From NCBI GenBank assembly GCA_977017575.1, contig CDRNVI010000034.1:124001-188000 (forward strand): a stretch of DNA of 64,000 nucleotides, in the 5' to 3' direction. The notes under the pieces are model-generated. The model was not told the origin of the DNA. It worked only from the letters and a program-made list of their open reading frames with translations, and made no database searches. Numbering within the stretch: position 1 is the first letter of the stretch; every line of letters starts with the position of its first letter. The translations under genes were made by a program, and so were the position numbers. Shown here piece by piece: positions 49,165 through 55,201 of the stretch. The stretch is from Paramoeba atlantica. Lineage: Eukaryota > Protista > Discosea.

Positions 49165-49332
49165 TTAGTCAGTAACAACAATTTGGGTGTTACGTAAAGA
49201 AGTAAACCGTGGAAGTTCTGATCTTTTCACCGTCCCGCGCAGTTCACTATTGCGTGTCAAATGAAGATCTTTCAATGATGCTGGAAGGTGAGTCAAGTCA
49301 ACGACACCAGAAAACATATTGAACTTTAGACC
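49165..49332 (-). pseudogene. 3' fragment of the LRR gene interrupted by the retrotransposon
   Basis: GLKFNMFSGVVDLTHLPASLKDLHLTRNSELRG...IVVTD*; continues LKSL from 54026 in frame. Confidence 0.92.
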
Positions 49333-49432
49333 ATCATATTATCATACAGTTAATCTGCAGAGATTTGGTAAAGTGAATATCGGAAAATAATTCCGTTATC
49401 CGCGCACACAACGCGTTTAATTCACTTTTAGT

Positions 49433-52400
49433 TCAAGCAACGTTTGAATTTGGGTCATAGATCCAGTTTACGTCATCGCGGTGCTGAAAAAGTTGAAAAC
49501 TTCCTCGCAGTGCGCTCTGGGTCATACTTTGTCGGCATGCTTCGATGAGGCTATCGTTTCCAAGAAAAAGAGAGTTCAGAGCTCGAGCTGAGCTGTGGAG
49601 CTTCCCTCTTGCGCCTACTTCGAACACCAGAAGAAAGGTGGCTGGGTGCTCAAGCCTCCTGGAATGATAAATATTTGTATACTTGTTCATTTTCCGTTCA
49701 TGTGCGTAAGCAAAGTTCTCCTCCCAGGGGCAAGTGAGCTCTATGATATATTCTTCCCCGTTTGCCAGTTTCACCCAGCCGTCCGGTCGGAGCTCAGTGT
49801 CCAAGTTTGTGAGCCACGACGGAGTGGAGCGGAACTGAGGAAGATCAAAGTGCGCGAGTCTTGTTGCAGGAGAATTGGCCACACAGTATGCTAGGGTTTG
49901 GAGGACTAGATCATGCCGCAGGGTGTATCGGCCCTGTTCGAGTGATTTTGCACACCCGGAGAGGATATGGCGTGTGGTCTGCGTTTCGGTTCTGCATATC
50001 GGGCACTTGTCGCTGGTGTGGGTTGAAACGCCCCATTTGCGGAGTGATGCCCTCGTAGGAAGGGGGGTCTGAGTAATAACTGATGCCGTAAATCTTGAGA
50101 GGCTCTCGCTTTTCAGATTACATAGTGCAGCGGCAAAATCCCTCGCTAGATCCGCCTCAGTGGCCATCCTGAACCATTGCCCAGCTACGGTCGTACGTCG
50201 TTGAACAGCTTGGGAAAGGTGACGCTCATATTCAGTTGCAAGTACTCTTCGGACATTACCGCCGTGGAGGCTTTGAATGTCAATTGAGGGTCGAATGTGC
50301 CCGGATTGTCTCTTCGCTTGTTCTCGACGAATACGTTCGCGCAATGAATACTTGACAGCAGGATCCTTTGATTTCTCCATTTGCTGAGTAGTTTGTGCTG
50401 TGCATAAGAGCCACAGTTTCGACAAGCTCATGAGGTTCCACCCGTGCTCGGAGTAGAGAAGTTCACTCGTGGCTGTTTTGGCGAGGTTGAGCCATTTACG
50501 GATCGCTTGTGTAGCGTACCTCTGAAGACGAAGCACGTGGTTGAACGAGAGGCAGGTATTCACAACAAGGGAATAACGAAGACGCGAGATGACACCCTGG
50601 TTGTATATCCAGAGTCGTGCGGGCAGGGCATGGGCACTATTCGTAATATTTTGTAGCCACATGCGCAGACGAGCTCGCAGTTTCTGGAAGAGAATCTTGC
50701 TTTGTTGTGCACCTGGAGCAAGCGTCATCCCTAAGAAGGTGCTTCCTTTGTCGCATATCTGGGGAATCGGAGCTCCATTGATCGTGAGCTGAGGACGCCG
50801 AGTCATATAACCCGAGTCTTGCGTCATGTGCTGAATTCGGCACTTTTTAACGTTGAGGTTCATCCCAATGTCGGAAAGGCCTTTTACAAGGACATTGGTG
50901 GCATTTTGCATTTCCCTGGGGGTATTCGTAATGATGGTAAGGTCGTCGGCGAAGGCTTTGAGAAAGGTCTCTTTGTCATCCCATGTGATCCCATATTGTG
51001 GGCAGCTTGATCGAACGAAACGCAGAACCAACTCCATTGCAAGATTGAATAGTATGGGGGAGAGAGTATCGCCCTGCAATACACCTCGATCTATCGGGAT
51101 GGGTTTTGTAAGACCTTCAGCGCACTTGATTTGAATGGATGCTTTCTCGTAGAGTTGTTCTATGTATTGAACGATAATTGGAGATACGCGCGCCCATTTT
51201 AGAGCCTGTAACAGCACAGTATGGGGTACGGACCCGAAAGCATTTTTGATGTCGAACTGTGCTAGACAGTATTGTCGTTTGTGGCGTCTTTGGTATTCGA
51301 GGAGTTCACATAAAACTTGAGTGTGCTCTACAGTACCATTCATGTGGGGGAGAAAACCTTTTTGTATCGACGTGTCTATGGCGTGAGAATCGAGGGCGTG
51401 GTGGAGGATGCGATGACTTATGATTGAGTGAAAAAGTTTCCCGAGACAGCTGGTAAGACTAATTGGGCGCCAGTTTTCCATGAGTTTAGTGTCGCCTCCT
51501 TTGTGGATCAGTCGGGTGACGGCCGTTTTCCATGTCGGCGGGCATACGCCGAATTTGAGTATGTCGTTGAATACCTGCGCGACGACCGAGTAGATGGAAG
51601 GGCAACGCTTTAACAAGATGTTGGTTATGGTATCTGACCCCGGAGCGGCCCCCGAACGTTTTGATGATATGGCTGCGGCAATGGTGGGTCCATCTATCTC
51701 GACCCATTCCATGTGTCCACGTGGTCTAGGTTCGGTAAACTCATCTGGTGGGATGCTGAATGTCCCGTCCGGTTTGGTCAAGGATGTCTCGAAGAAGCGT
51801 TCGACCTCCTGGATGGGCACTGTGGGATATAATGAGTCTTTCCCGTCGCGATCTGCATCGTGGTGGTCTAAGCACTCCCCTGCAGCTGTCCACGGGTTGC
51901 GTTGAAATCGAGTTTGAGCCCACCGTCGTTCGATTTCCATTTTTTGTGGGCGTGCTTCTTCCTCGTATAGTTTTAGCGCTTTGTGTGCTTCTTTTATCCT
52001 CCCTCTTTGGGCATTTCGCTCTGGGCTGTGCATAAAGGTCAGTGACCGTTTTAGTTGACGAACGTGTAGATTTAATGACTTGAGAGTACGGTCGATGGCA
52101 AGGGGGCGTGAGCTACGTTTGGACCTGCCTGTTCGGGTTCGAAGTAGAAACCCGCGTGTGGGGTTAATCTCTTTCGCAGTTTCGTAGACGGATACAGCCA
52201 AGATGGCAGAAATGACTTCAGCTTGGAACAGCGCGTCTTCTTTACTTCGCGCAGGGTGCATGAATGCATTGCAACGTCCTTCAATTCTTGAGATGGTGAG
52301 ATCCCATTGGCTAGTGTCAAAGTGCACCAGGGCACGTCCACCTTGAATGGTGCGGAATGTTTCAAGCATGCTCTCGAGCTCCGAGCGTGGACAGGGTGGT

Positions 52401-53929
52401 GTGGCATGCGATGCGTTTGTTCGTGGGGTTCGTTGGAGTATAGTGTGGGCACCGTTGTGGTATGAGCGGTCTGAGATCGGATCTGGGCGTCGTTCAGTAG
52501 ACATTGCGGCGTTTGCAGGATGCGGGGGAGAATCTGCGACGGGGGTTGTTGGAAAGCGGTCGGCGAGGGGCTCAGGTTGTGAGGATGGTTGAACTTCCTG
52601 GGGGGCAGGCAGTGCGGTCGGTTGGGTCGGTCTATCGAGTATAAGGAGGTTTCGTACAGTCCAGGATATTGCAGAGCAGGCGATTTCTCCAGCTCTCACG
52701 AGCGCGCCTTTTTGGCTGCAGGCGTGTTGGCATTGCGATTTATCTTTGCACTTATGCTTGCAGGGACGACGTGGTCTTGTGTCTCGTGATACGTCATTTT
52801 CGTTACTGGGGGACGGTTCGTTGGGGGCGGTGCCGGGAGGCTGGGTGTTGGGAAGTGGAATTTCTCCCATGGTCCCTTCCGTGGTCTCCGTTCGCGTGGT
52901 TGGCGTCTCTGCTGTGGGAATTTCGGTTACATCCGTGGAAGCCGATGTCCACGGAATTAGATTTCGCAATGACCATGAGTGGTTTCTATTCGCCGTTGGA
53001 CTGATGCGGACTCCCTCCTTGCAACATTTGTGCTTACATAGAGTCTTATTGCCACACTGATGCTTGCATGGGCGGTAGTTGTCCCGGTTGGCCGTCTCTG
53101 TTGCGTTAGGATCGCTGTTGCTCCCTTGTGGCGGTGGTTGTGTGTGGGGCATAAGTCGTGTTGGTCTTGCGAGACTCCTTTCCGAGCTGTTAGTTTCTAT
53201 TGCATGTACGTGTATGCGATTTTCCGTGTTCGTGCATGTGATAGTCGTCATATCGGGGTGGGCATCGATCGAGTGGGCAGGGGTAAAGTTCGTATGTGTA
53301 ACCGGTTGATCCATTGGAGGCTGTGCGGAATGCAAGTCGTGGTGTACCATCAGTTCGTCTTTGGATACGAGCACACCGATTTTGCAACAACTGTGTAGAC
53401 ATTTTGTTTTGTCGCGACAGGTGTGCTTGCAAGGTCTTCGCGTCTCCGTATTCGTATGGTGACGGATGGAGTTCGTTGTTGTGACAAGTGGTGCCTCCCT
53501 TTCCGTACTATTCGGTCCCACGGCGGTAGCTTCTGCGGGCGGATTAACCACGGCGGTGACGTCCAGCTGGCGTTGAGGTGGTTTCTTCTCTTTATATTCC
53601 AGGTATTCGCATGCACCATGGTCCATAACATTCTGTACTGTGCATTTACCGACGACTAGCCCGTCACTTCTTTTGTTCTCTGTTTTTAGAGTCTTGTTTA
53701 GGGAATCTTCGGCAGTGTGTACACTCGAGAAGAACTTCTTATCGGTAAGAAAGACAGCCGCGGCGTGTGCATCCGGAAAATATGACCACTGAACGCTTGA
53801 AGCGAGTCGAAGTTTCACTGGTACCGCGCGACTCTGGATGAAGTGGAAATTCTGTTGCTTCGCGCTGACAGGTCCTCGAGGAAGGCCGTCGTGCGCGTCG
53901 GGAGCAGATGTGATAACATTGGAGGACAT
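49433..53929 (-). CDS. Retrotransposon ORF: 3 Cys/His motifs, reverse transcriptase, CCHC knuckle, restriction-like endonuclease (1498 aa)
   Basis: APGSD, WRPISL, IDTSIQKGF, DIKNAFGSVPH, GVLQGDTLSP, FADD; CPIC..HILSGC; RHD, RPDG, ELTCPWEEN, EVGARG; no stops. Confidence 0.97.
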   Translation of the reverse strand: MSSNVITSAPDAHDGLPRGPVSAKQQNFHFIQSRAVPVKLRLASSVQWSYFPDAHAAAVFLTDKKFFSSVHTAEDSLNKTLKTENKRSDGLVVGKCTVQNVMDHGACEYLEYKEKKPPQRQLDVTAVVNPPAEATAVGPNSTEREAPLVTTTNSIRHHTNTETRRPCKHTCRDKTKCLHSCCKIGVLVSKDELMVHHDLHSAQPPMDQPVTHTNFTPAHSIDAHPDMTTITCTNTENRIHVHAIETNSSERSLARPTRLMPHTQPPPQGSNSDPNATETANRDNYRPCKHQCGNKTLCKHKCCKEGVRISPTANRNHSWSLRNLIPWTSASTDVTEIPTAETPTTRTETTEGTMGEIPLPNTQPPGTAPNEPSPSNENDVSRDTRPRRPCKHKCKDKSQCQHACSQKGALVRAGEIACSAISWTVRNLLILDRPTQPTALPAPQEVQPSSQPEPLADRFPTTPVADSPPHPANAAMSTERRPDPISDRSYHNGAHTILQRTPRTNASHATPPCPRSELESMLETFRTIQGGRALVHFDTSQWDLTISRIEGRCNAFMHPARSKEDALFQAEVISAILAVSVYETAKEINPTRGFLLRTRTGRSKRSSRPLAIDRTLKSLNLHVRQLKRSLTFMHSPERNAQRGRIKEAHKALKLYEEEARPQKMEIERRWAQTRFQRNPWTAAGECLDHHDADRDGKDSLYPTVPIQEVERFFETSLTKPDGTFSIPPDEFTEPRPRGHMEWVEIDGPTIAAAISSKRSGAAPGSDTITNILLKRCPSIYSVVAQVFNDILKFGVCPPTWKTAVTRLIHKGGDTKLMENWRPISLTSCLGKLFHSIISHRILHHALDSHAIDTSIQKGFLPHMNGTVEHTQVLCELLEYQRRHKRQYCLAQFDIKNAFGSVPHTVLLQALKWARVSPIIVQYIEQLYEKASIQIKCAEGLTKPIPIDRGVLQGDTLSPILFNLAMELVLRFVRSSCPQYGITWDDKETFLKAFADDLTIITNTPREMQNATNVLVKGLSDIGMNLNVKKCRIQHMTQDSGYMTRRPQLTINGAPIPQICDKGSTFLGMTLAPGAQQSKILFQKLRARLRMWLQNITNSAHALPARLWIYNQGVISRLRYSLVVNTCLSFNHVLRLQRYATQAIRKWLNLAKTATSELLYSEHGWNLMSLSKLWLLCTAQTTQQMEKSKDPAVKYSLRERIRREQAKRQSGHIRPSIDIQSLHGGNVRRVLATEYERHLSQAVQRRTTVAGQWFRMATEADLARDFAAALCNLKSESLSRFTASVITQTPLPTRASLRKWGVSTHTSDKCPICRTETQTTRHILSGCAKSLEQGRYTLRHDLVLQTLAYCVANSPATRLAHFDLPQFRSTPSWLTNLDTELRPDGWVKLANGEEYIIELTCPWEENFAYAHERKMNKYTNIYHSRRLEHPATFLLVFEVGARGKLHSSARALNSLFLGNDSLIEACRQSMTQSALRGSFQLFQHRDDVNWIYDPNSNVA

Positions 53930-53968
53930 GCTCCGAGAGATAAGTTTAGTACAAAATTGAAAATAATT

Positions 53969-54023
53969 CAACAAGGTACAGAAACAACAAGGTACAGGAA
54001 CTGTATCTTTATAATGATTTCTC
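53969..54023 (-). other. Spliced-leader copy (53985-54023) plus tandem relic SL (53969-53984)
   Basis: AAAGATACAGTTCCTGTACCTTGTTG then TTTCTGTACCTTGTTG; 16/19 match to the kinetoplastid SL core CAGTTTCTGTACTTTATTG. Confidence 0.85.
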
Positions 54024-54025
54024 TA

Positions 54026-54763
54026 TAATGATTTCAAAGAATTTGGCAGCGAAGTCAAGTCGGGTGTTCCAGTAAATGAATTACCGTCAAGATAAAGATC
54101 TACTAGTCCTGCGGGAAGTGTACTGAGAGACACTTCACCATTAAACTTGTTGTGGGATATACCCAATCTTCGCATTTTTGGAGGGAGTGAAGTCAAGTCC
54201 ACGGACCCGGAAAATTTATTACTGTTCAAAAGGAATATTTCCAGATTTGATGGTAAATAGTTCCATGGAACTTCACCTGTAAGACCTTTTACTTGGTAAG
54301 ACATATCAAGAATTTGAAGAGTATGAGGCAAATAAACGAGATGCAGCGCACCTTCGATTTTACCAAGGCCCAAGAAAGCGTTTTCAGCTTTGGGAAAAAG
54401 TTCCACTTCATTAATGAATCTTCCCATGTACTTAAAAACGGAGGGATTCGGATCCCATTCGAATGGTTTCTTCCAGTTTAGCTCAGATACTTCGCCTCTT
54501 TCATTGCACTTCACGTAAGCCCACTCACAGGCTGGGGTACTACTCTTCCATGACGGATGCGGATTCGTAATATCTTGCACAAGATCCGCAAGTTCTAGTT
54601 CTTGTGGGCGATTCGCAGAACTTACCTTAGCGACACGAGGCTTTCGCGTGACTTCTGGAACATCCATGAGATAGAATAAATAAAAGAAGGGGTAATCTAA
54701 TATTAGTATATTATATAGGGGTGTTGTATTATCTAAAAGAAGTGCTGTGTAGAAAGTATACAT
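54026..54763 (-). pseudogene. 5' fragment of the interrupted LRR gene
   Basis: RVAKVSSANRPQELEL, TPACEWAYVKC cap, LRRs ending LPNSLKSL at the junction. Confidence 0.92.
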
Positions 54764-55201
54764 ACAGTGATGTTGAGCGGCATTTCTCGCTTTACAGATC
54801 GTGAATGTTCTTTGATCTCGAAGATATTTTGTGTACAACCGTTTTTCGATCCCAGCGTTCCATATCCGCTGTCCTTTTCACTCCAGTGAATGACTTACAC
54901 AAAGTGTAACAAACACAGAAAATAGGGTTATACATTTAGATGTGTTGACGCCTGGGCTCAATGATGCGAATTACGTCCCGCTTGCAGTCAAGCAGTCAAG
55001 AGGATTTTGCAAGCTTACTTCGATCTTGTTTCTTAAAAATTAGAATTGAGAATATTATAAAATTTGAAAGATTCGATCAAAATAAAAGTTAGCCCCCGAA
55101 CCCCGTAGCGCACGAAGATTCAATGATTCCTACATTTTGGGAAAAATAGGCGGTTAAATCTTTTTGGAAGCGAAACATCCCCTGGCCATAATATTATCAA
55201 A

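What the first reader, a model, noticed from the sequence alone, without database searches (positions are those of the whole stretch)
53969..54025. Retrotransposon capped by a spliced leader plus a stacked relic SL: a record of repeated trans-splice and retrotranspose cycles
Seen: the element 5' end (minus strand) is ...ATAAAGATACAG-TTCCTGTACCTTGTTG-TTTCTGTACCTTGTTG-AATTATTTTC, 39 nt before the ATG. The second copy starts exactly after the SL-internal AG, neither copy is followed by the GT donor of an SL RNA gene, and both share two departures (C, G) from the trypanosomatid core. Established: kinetoplastid mRNAs receive a 39-nt SL; tandem relic SLs starting after an internal AG mark mRNA recycling in dinoflagellates; R2 and L1Tc/ingi use HDV-like ribozymes to define their 5' ends. 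Inference: this element is co-transcribed in the polycistron, gets its 5' end and cap by SL trans-splicing, and copies the SL into DNA. The SL's own AG then serves as the next splice acceptor, so each new copy carries its own processing site. It also reveals the host's probable SL sequence.
Basis: partly seen in the sequence, partly recalled or inferred. Interest (0 to 1): 0.92.

Follow-up and report, generated by a model that had tools for sequence, protein, structure and literature searches.

The report
Spliced-leader relics heading a retrotransposon
A young, intact retrotransposon in a kinetoplastid genome starts with a DNA copy of the cell's own spliced leader plus a second 16-base leader remnant. 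This shows it was copied from trans-spliced RNA and probably received a leader twice, as part of a genome-wide habit of writing leader-tagged RNAs back into DNA.

Summary
On the minus strand, 54012-53985 is host SL nt 11-38 (one T>C), 53984-53969 is a perfect second copy of SL nt 23-38, then a 39-nt UTR and the ATG.

The host SL is now known from tandem SL RNA/5S arrays, where the exon ends ...GATACAG TTTCTGTACCTTGTTG | GTATGAGAAGC. The 16-mer is the exact exon 3' end and starts right after the internal CAG.

The element (49333-54026) is an R2/CRE-type LINE with a restriction-like endonuclease. It sits in sense inside an LRR gene, and a paralog supplies the empty site. It has no SL-gene flanks, no duplication of the target site and no poly(A).

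About 20 related copies in different flanks also start with the SL, so an SLACS-style SL-gene insertion is rejected.

Stacking recurs genome-wide, and the upstream unit always runs to the exon end, which is a splicing signature. The 16-nt relic occurs at 14-16 loci. A 10-nt relic that follows CUG, not AG, is commoner (about 44 loci).

Only this copy carries the clean stack (two others carry degenerate variants), so the relic AG is not the routine processing site. LINE copies never keep more than 28 SL nt, which is the SLACS/CZAR nt 11|12 position.

Other windows of this genome were flagged earlier for the same phenomenon. No RNA evidence was obtainable.

The parts
49333..54026 (-). The whole insertion: a non-LTR retrotransposon with a restriction-like endonuclease (R2/CRE-type), about 4.7 kb
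   Evidence: The boundaries come from an uninterrupted paralogous LRR gene (L022/L021), where the two flanks are contiguous. Other copies are about 99% identical over the 5' 1.5 kb.
49433..53929 (-). Intact ORF of 1498 aa. It has three Cys-rich RPCKHxCxDKxxCxHxCC repeats at the N-terminus, a reverse transcriptase at 808-1068, zf-RVT, and a C-terminal CCHC plus RPD...E...K endonuclease-like motif
   Evidence: Pfam RVT_1 scores 1.9e-32. The best solved relatives are R2 proteins (1.7e-32), and the C-terminus aligns weakly to the R2 endonuclease region.
53930..53968 (-). 39-nt 5' UTR (AATTATTTTCAATTTTGTACTAAAC...)
   Evidence: Its first 12 nt are absent in sister copies L005/L006, where the SL joins TTTTGTAC directly.
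53969..53984 (-). Relic SL, a perfect copy of host SL nt 23-38 (TTTCTGTACCTTGTTG) that starts right after the SL-internal CAG
   Evidence: Compared with the SL RNA gene exon in L085. The same relic occurs at 14 exact loci plus a few one-mismatch variants, with a control count of 0.
53985..54012 (-). Upstream SL unit, host SL nt 11-38 with one T>C at nt 24 (TTCCTG). It is complete to the exon's last G
   Evidence: 28 nt is the modal and maximal SL length in LINE copies.
54013..54026 (-). 14-nt filler at the 5' junction, ATAGAG plus AAATCATT. The AAATCATT repeats the 8 nt of flank just upstream. The filler supplies the TAG that truncates the LRR ORF
   Evidence: The empty-site comparison is. Similar short duplications of the junction occur in L005 and L017.
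49333..49366 (-). 3' terminal motif (AAATCTCTGC...GTATGATAATATGAT). There is no poly(A). A similar terminus is found on a non-autonomous element of about 560 nt
54027..54838 (-). Upstream part of the interrupted host LRR gene
   Evidence: Weak Pfam LRRNT_2/LRR_1 hits. It reads in frame up to the insertion.
49165..49331 (-). Downstream continuation of the same LRR gene
   Evidence: It is 87-88% identical to the uninterrupted paralogs directly after the insertion point.

Best explanation
The feature is the 5' end of a young, coding-intact, R2/CRE-type LINE with a restriction-like endonuclease. It lies in sense orientation inside an LRR gene of a minus-strand polycistron in a kinetoplastid.

Shown:
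- Its first 28 nt are the last 28 nt of the host's spliced leader.
- They are joined to a further 16 nt of leader and then to the element's UTR.
- Each joint lies exactly at the leader exon's 3' end.
- That joint is made by trans-splicing and is not present in the SL RNA gene.

Inferred: the element, or its immediate ancestor, was transcribed with the polycistron, received a leader, and was reverse transcribed into DNA with the leader attached. A leader-bearing DNA copy was then transcribed again. A new leader was spliced onto the CAG inside the old one, which left nt 23-38 as a relic. That RNA was copied into the LRR gene.

The new leader was kept only from nt 11 onward, which is the fixed limit of all LINE copies. 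The reason for this limit is unknown.

Re-splicing at the relic AG is an occasional side route, not the family's normal way of making its 5' end.
For: - The host SL comes from 2.56-kb tandem SL RNA/5S arrays, with the exon followed by GTATGAGAAGC. About 40 such genes exist, against at least 700 SL 23-mers in the genome.
- At least 20 LINE copies in several subfamilies (75-100% identity) sit in unrelated flanks. All start with SL nt 11-38 or a shorter part of it, joined at the last G to the UTR. A further copy in an ENA-deposited assembly (possibly the same or a near-identical genome) shows the same.
- The empty-site paralog shows a simple insertion in an LRR gene with no SL-gene flank.
- Host retrogenes and a retroposed SL RNA carry nearly full SLs next to poly(A), so SL-tagged RNAs are reverse transcribed in this genome.
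- The 16-nt relic after CAG recurs at 14-16 loci before at least 10 different genes, and a 22-nt relic after AAAG occurs at 2 loci.
- In censuses that left the upstream unit's end free, that unit always ran to the exon end (27 of 27 and 10 of 10 direct joints). Random slippage does not predict this.
- No SL RNA gene with an internal duplication exists.
Against: - No RNA data were available. The one possible RNA run has no contig on the element.
- Only this copy, of about 20 sampled, has the clean stack (two others carry degenerate variants), and no master copy with an ordinary AG before the UTR was found. How unstacked copies renew a perfect SL is therefore unexplained.
- The commonest relic (10 nt, about 44 loci, at least 14 genes) starts after CUG. 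Relics of 4-9, 15 and 17 nt also occur. Some exon-end-specific process other than AG splicing must therefore exist, and it could also have made the 16-nt class.
- In the window the mutated unit is the upstream one, which should be the younger. The family diverges by about 1%, so this is weak evidence.
- The sequence upstream of the relic CAG has no clear polypyrimidine tract.
Confidence: 0.6

Rival explanations
1. An exon-end-specific event without re-splicing. During reverse transcription the enzyme reaches the 5' end of a shortened template, one that ends inside the old leader. It then jumps end-to-end onto the 3' end of a free SL exon, which is the first-step splicing intermediate. This yields a full SL followed by a relic of arbitrary length.
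For: - Relics start at many positions that are not preceded by AG: 10, 9, 7, 5, 4, 15 and 17 nt.
- Template switching at SL sequences is directly visible where 3'-truncated SL fragments lie upstream of a full SL (L029, L095/L097, L099, L109).
- Extra spacer bases sit at some joints.
Against: - Free SL exon is a rare, spliceosome-bound species.
- The model gives no reason for the strong modes at 10 and 16 nt.
- There is no precedent in kinetoplastids.
Confidence: 0.18
2. A simple 16-nt tandem duplication of the inherited leader relic. It would arise by slippage of the reverse transcriptase or a DNA polymerase, with no second leader addition.
For: - The window's structure (nt 11-22, then nt 23-38 twice) is formally a tandem repeat.
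- Small duplications and deletions are common at these 5' ends, for example the 14-nt filler, the 12-nt difference in L005/L006 and the 7-nt units.
Against: - In the censuses every stacked unit is in phase with the exon end. No duplication in any other phase was found.
- The microhomology for the 16-nt unit is a single G.
Confidence: 0.1
3. An SLACS/CZAR/NeSL-style origin, in which the leader sequence is target DNA from an insertion into an SL RNA gene.
For: - The element is a LINE with a restriction-like endonuclease, like the CRE clade.
- The 28-nt limit of the leader part equals the position of the SLACS/CZAR insertion site, nt 11|12.
Against: - There is no SL promoter upstream and no intron (GTATGAG) downstream.
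- The leader lies 5' of the element and ends exactly at the exon end.
- All flanks differ and are often LRR genes, and an empty site exists in a paralog.
- No LINE copy lies in an SL gene.
Confidence: 0.04

Closest known systems
Relict DinoSL retrogenes of dinoflagellates ('recycling of processed cDNAs', Slamovits and Keeling 2008; reviewed in PMC6050394)
   Same: The leader is written into DNA at the 5' end of retrocopies. Tandem leader remnants mark repeated rounds. One relic class begins right after the leader's internal AG. Retrocopies form tandem arrays.
   Different: The host here is a kinetoplastid with a 38-nt leader. The tag also heads autonomous LINEs and their short partner, not only host genes. 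The commonest relic does not follow an AG. No report of this for Euglenozoa was found in the searched library.
CRE clade of trypanosomatid LINEs (SLACS, CZAR, CRE1/2)
   Same: A single large ORF carries a reverse transcriptase, a C-terminal restriction-like endonuclease and Cys-rich motifs. The host group is the same, and there is an intimate link to the spliced leader. The leader part begins at the position equal to their nt 11|12 insertion site.
   Different: These copies are not in SL RNA genes. They have no poly(A) and no target-site duplication. The leader lies at the element's own 5' end and ends at the exon end. Insertions favour one phase of LRR repeats.
R2 elements
   Same: They are the best solved relatives, with the same domain order. 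Both depend on co-transcription with the host unit and need a way to define the RNA 5' end.
   Different: R2 uses a self-cleaving ribozyme and the 28S rDNA target. Here the 5' end carries a spliced leader and no known RNA family matches.
L1Tc/ingi with the Pr77 promoter/ribozyme
   Same: They are kinetoplastid LINEs that must create a 5' end inside polycistrons.
   Different: They use an AP-type endonuclease, a poly(A) tail and the Pr77 hallmark. None of these is seen here.

Membership tests
Non-LTR retrotransposon with restriction-like endonuclease (R2 supergroup) | LINE-type reverse transcriptase domain | tested here: met
   Pfam RVT_1 scores 1.9e-32 at residues 808-1068. R2 proteins are the best PDB matches at 1.7e-32.
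Non-LTR retrotransposon with restriction-like endonuclease (R2 supergroup) | C-terminal CCHC motif plus a PD-(D/E)xK-type endonuclease, and no AP endonuclease | tested here: inconclusive
   CPIC...H...C, RHD, RPD...IELT...K and GARGK are visible in the translation. They align to the R2 endonuclease region, but that stretch alone is not significant. No Exo_endo_phos hit was found.
CRE clade (SLACS/CZAR/CRE1/CRE2) | Insertion at a fixed site (nt 11|12) inside SL RNA genes | tested here: not met
   The window copy lies in an LRR gene, and a paralog supplies the empty site. None of the LINE copies has SL nt 1-10 or the SL promoter upstream.
CRE clade (SLACS/CZAR/CRE1/CRE2) | Poly(A) tail and target-site duplication | tested here: not met
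   The 3' ends read ...GTATGATAAT(ATGAT) with no A run, and no duplication flanks the window copy.
CRE clade (SLACS/CZAR/CRE1/CRE2) | Reverse transcriptase groups with CRE elements in a tree | not tested
   No named CRE reference sequence was available from the tools. The hits were unnamed or R2-like.
Leader-tagged retrocopies with relict leaders (dinoflagellate type) | Leader sequence encoded in DNA directly 5' of the UTR, joined at the exon end | tested here: met
Leader-tagged retrocopies with relict leaders (dinoflagellate type) | Relict leader truncated exactly after the leader's internal AG | tested here: met
   It is met at this locus and at 14-16 others. Genome-wide, however, the commoner 10-nt relic follows CUG.
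Leader-tagged retrocopies with relict leaders (dinoflagellate type) | Transcripts that carry a fresh leader spliced onto the relict one | not testable with these tools
   Only contigs were served. The single possible RNA run does not cover the element.

The most novel reading that the evidence does not exclude
This kinetoplastid runs a dinoflagellate-like cycle from mRNA to DNA on a large scale, with at least 660 leader copies outside SL RNA genes. Its restriction-endonuclease LINEs would be descendants of SL-gene-specific CRE elements that now use the leader itself as their 5' module.

On this reading, the strict 28-nt limit is a working remnant of the ancestral nt 11|12 cleavage or second-strand priming step. 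A leader relic, with its branch-like CUUUAAC, its CAG and its UUUCU tract, would act as a portable mini acceptor that lets retrocopies be re-leadered wherever they land. This would include a non-AG site after CUG.
Probability: 0.25. Interest if true: 0.9.

Novelty: new variant of a known kind. Interest (0 to 1): 0.72.

Why it matters
Leader relics give a built-in, datable tag for every RNA-to-DNA event. In dinoflagellates that tag transformed the study of gene duplication, and nothing comparable was found in the searched literature for Euglenozoa.

Here the tag also sits on autonomous LINEs. That shows how a promoter-less element can obtain a capped, translatable 5' end in a genome where all genes are co-transcribed.

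Three observations give concrete handles on LINE integration and on 3' splice-site choice in trans-splicing:
- the fixed 28-nt limit at the SLACS/CZAR position;
- the bias for one phase of LRR repeats;
- the non-AG relic class.

Tried and rejected
- Rfam on the window found no family, so no ribozyme or SL model matched.
- Sequencing runs gave no usable RNA. Only contigs were served, the one possible RNA run covers two neighbouring genes but not the element, and organism names were coded.
- A search for a master copy with the UTR preceded by something other than the SL found none.
- A search for LINE copies with more than 28 nt of SL, or sitting in SL genes, found none.
- A 7.3-kb SL repeat unit on contig C74 carries a different insertion in the spacer, not in the exon.
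- The window's 3' flank resembles the reverse complement of SL nt 1-11. Four other LINE 3' junctions and about 30 junctions of the short partner do not reproduce this, so I treat it as chance.
- SL RNA gene variants that could explain the stacks without recycling were not found. I looked for an internal 10- or 16-nt duplication, a TTTCAG variant, and a TTCCTG variant followed by the intron.
- The hairpin at SL nt 18-30 is predicted but is no better than shuffles, with z = -1.0.
- Literature searches for the SL sequence, and for leader relics or retrogenes in kinetoplastids, found nothing relevant.
- The Bodo saltans papers mention SLACS/CZAR-like elements but not leader relics.
- The organism was not identified.

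Full report
**Observation**

- 54012-54001 is ATAAAGATACAG.
- 54000-53985 is TTCCTGTACCTTGTTG.
- 53984-53969 is TTTCTGTACCTTGTTG.
- A 39-nt UTR follows, and the ATG is at 53929.

The 13-mer core occurs only at these two places in the window, against 0.09 expected by chance. A contig from public run X2 bridges 53968-54115 without a difference. That run may be the source of the assembly.

**What the element is**

ORF 49433-53929 (minus strand, 1498 aa) is intact.
- It has a reverse transcriptase domain (Pfam RVT_1, 1.9e-32) and zf-RVT.
- It has three N-terminal Cys-rich repeats.
- Its C-terminus carries CCHC, RHD, RPD...E...K and GARGK motifs.
- Its best solved relatives are R2 proteins (1.7e-32). 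The C-terminus aligns, weakly, to the R2 endonuclease region.
- Feature-based look-alikes are also R2-type.
- No AP endonuclease domain is present.

I therefore read it as a LINE of the R2/CRE supergroup, with a restriction-like endonuclease.

Two uninterrupted paralogous LRR genes (L022 and L021) have the two flanks contiguous. This sets the insertion at 49333-54026.
- There is no target-site duplication and no poly(A).
- The 3' end reads ...GTATGATAATATGAT.
- A 14-nt filler sits at the 5' junction. It is ATAGAG plus a repeat of the last 8 flank bases, and it creates the stop codon that truncates the LRR ORF.
- The element lies in the same direction as the LRR gene and as nearly all long ORFs of the window. 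It would therefore be co-transcribed.
- Sister copies are about 99% identical, so the family is young.

**The host's spliced leader**

Two contigs carry tandem arrays with a 2.56-kb period. Each unit holds a 5S rRNA gene and the sequence (T)AACTTTAACGATAAAGATACAGTTTCTGTACCTTGTTG followed by GTATGAGAAGC. That is the kinetoplastid-type donor.

About 40 such genes are in the assembly.

**Not an SL-gene insertion**

At least 20 further LINE copies exist in several subfamilies (75-100% identity). They lie in unrelated flanks and all begin with the SL joined at its last G to the UTR. A further copy in an ENA-deposited assembly, which may be the same or a near-identical genome, does the same.
- None has the SL promoter upstream or the intron downstream.
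- The SL part varies in length (24, 25, 26 or 28 nt), as 5' truncation would produce.
- A joint exactly at the exon end is what trans-splicing makes. The SL RNA gene continues with GTATGAG at that point.

This is the main evidence that leadered RNA was reverse transcribed.

Other leadered RNAs were also reverse transcribed in this genome.
- Hundreds of host retrogenes carry nearly full SLs directly after the poly(A) tail of the upstream copy. They include 2.28-kb tandem arrays.
- One retroposed SL RNA, with its intron and an A run, starts at nt 3 (L075).
- A non-autonomous element of about 560 nt starts with the SL and shares the LINE's 3' terminal motif. A 24-nt probe spanning its SL-to-body joint gives 158 hits.
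- In all, the SL 23-mer occurs at least 700 times. That count looks capped, so the true number may be higher.

**The stacked relic**

The junction of an SL 3' end followed by the 16-mer occurs at 14 loci exactly, plus a few near-exact variants. The control count is 0. These loci lie before at least 10 different genes or elements.

A census that left the relic length free gave the following:

| Relic | Starts after | Loci |
|---|---|---|
| 10 nt (TACCTTGTTG) | CUG | about 44, at least 14 genes in a sample of 20 |
| 16 nt | CAG | 14 to 16 |
| 22 nt | AAAG | 2 |
| 17 nt | | 4 |
| 15, 9, 7, 5 and 4 nt | | a scatter |

Some joints also carry a few spacer bases.

Two further censuses left the end of the upstream unit free. 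In every direct joint the upstream unit ran to the exon's last G: 27 of 27 for the 10-nt relic and 10 of 10 for the 16-nt relic. No duplication in any other phase was found.

Slippage guided by microhomology would be expected to land at the internal TTG as well, and it never does. No SL RNA gene carries such a duplication or a TTTCAG variant.

So stacks come from a process that adds a complete SL exon. For the 16- and 22-nt classes, an AG acceptor inside the old leader explains this, as in dinoflagellates. The 10-nt class needs either a non-AG acceptor or another exon-end-specific step. Template switching at SL sequences certainly happens, because 3'-truncated SL fragments sit upstream of full SLs in L029, L095/L097, L099 and L109.

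I therefore rate re-leadering at the CAG as the most likely origin of the window's stack, at about 0.6. It is not proven.

Only the window copy, of about 20 copies sampled in this LINE group, has the clean 16-nt stack. L010 and L023 carry degenerate variants. If the relic AG were the routine acceptor, stacks would grow with every cycle.

No master copy with an ordinary acceptor before the UTR was found. How the many unstacked copies keep a perfect SL while their UTRs diverge is therefore open. Sister copies L005 and L006 join the SL 12 nt further in.

LINE copies never retain more than 28 SL nt, in about a dozen independent junctions at exactly 28. Retrogenes retain 36-38 nt. The short partner element mostly retains 28 nt and rarely 31-36.

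Counted from the 3' end, that limit is the nt 11|12 position where SLACS and CZAR insert into SL genes (PMC5814959). I cannot explain this. Three candidate explanations are:
- a second-strand priming or cleavage step inherited from CRE-like ancestors;
- a protein footprint on the leader;
- an inherited relic with an unknown way of making the RNA 5' end.

**Target choice**

Of 45 unique LINE and partner-element junctions, 10 have a D-L-x-x-L-P-x-x-L motif within the 60 nt upstream, always in sense orientation. Random 60-mers from the same loci show the motif in 0.9% of cases, and no junction shows it in antisense. The window copy fits the same pattern.

**Comparison and novelty**

The phenomenon works like dinoflagellate mRNA recycling, but in a kinetoplastid and on autonomous LINEs. 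The protein resembles the CRE clade and R2, but the element fails the CRE defining features that I could test: it has no SL-gene site, no poly(A) and no target-site duplication.

I found no report of leader relics in Euglenozoa in the searched library.

Earlier notes of this scan had already flagged the same phenomenon on other pieces of this genome. One follow-up judged AG recycling unsupported. My censuses give it partial support and add the exon-end rule and the 10-nt class.

**What is missing**

RNA evidence is missing.

Noticed in passing
L085 (G000:C107:1500-7200); also contig C97: True SL RNA genes lie in 2.56-kb tandem repeats, each with a 5S rRNA gene on the opposite strand. About 40 SL RNA genes are in the assembly.
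   Followed up: yes
L031-L060, e.g. L046:1486-2050: A non-autonomous element of about 560 nt starts with the SL (mostly 28 nt) joined to GTACATTTTGCTAGCC... It has strong hairpins and variable 76-nt repeats. It ends in ...TCTCTGCGCCAAAGAGCGCATGATAAACAA, which resembles the LINE 3' end. A 24-nt junction probe gives 158 hits.
   Followed up: partly
L093 (G000:C22:137200-142100); L094-L112: At least 231 loci have the SL (31 nt or more) followed by AATTATT. Most are host-type retrogenes, for example a family with a GSWDQF motif and one starting MGGHPPQ. Each follows the poly(A) tail of the upstream copy, and some form 2.28-kb tandem arrays.
   Followed up: partly
L110 (G000:C41:280750-281140): The SL RNA gene promoter region and the full SL exon are followed not by the intron but by a retrogene's UTR and ORF. 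The SL promoter could therefore transcribe this gene directly.
   Followed up: no
Upstream flanks of L007, L009, L011, L013, L017, L031, L038, L044, L052, L053 and window 54027-54060: LINE and partner-element insertions cluster in one phase of LRR repeats, just after L-P-x-x-L-x-x-L, and always in sense orientation. This holds for 10 of 45 junctions against 0.9% of control positions.
   Followed up: partly
L124-L143; about 44 loci genome-wide: The commonest stacked relic is 10 nt (TACCTTGTTG) and begins after CUG, not AG. It lies in front of many unrelated genes. One gene lineage has a 16-nt form (L117), a 10-nt form (L131) and a form with AATTATTTCCCC (L098) at the same place.
   Followed up: partly
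L075 (G000:C6, around 27086): A retroposed SL RNA pseudogene. The exon runs from nt 3 and continues into about 65 nt of intron, then an A run, in a non-array flank.
   Followed up: no
L029/L115, L095/L097, L099, L109: 3'-truncated SL fragments (for example nt 2-12, 8-16 or 8-25) lie directly upstream of a full SL. Some joints show microhomology. This is a signature of template switching by a reverse transcriptase at RNA 5' ends.
   Followed up: no
L065-L068, L070: The arrangement is UTR, then SL (36 nt), then the same 30-nt UTR, then the ATG. The 5' UTR is repeated on both sides of a leader relic, which is unexplained.
   Followed up: no
window 53998 (minus strand); G000:C14:320319, C23:4865, C51:186349, C60:165889; L071: The same T>C variant of the leader (TTCCTG) recurs in several unrelated retrocopies. 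No SL RNA gene in the assembly carries it.
   Followed up: partly
window about 53558-53570: Relative to sister copies (L002-L006) and to run X2, the window copy lacks about 337 nt in the N-terminal Cys-rich repeat region. The number of repeats therefore varies between copies.
   Followed up: no
L053:1481, L052:2281: The 3' end of one element abuts the leader relic (from about nt 13) of the next element. This suggests an occasional insertion next to, or into, a genomic leader copy.
   Followed up: no
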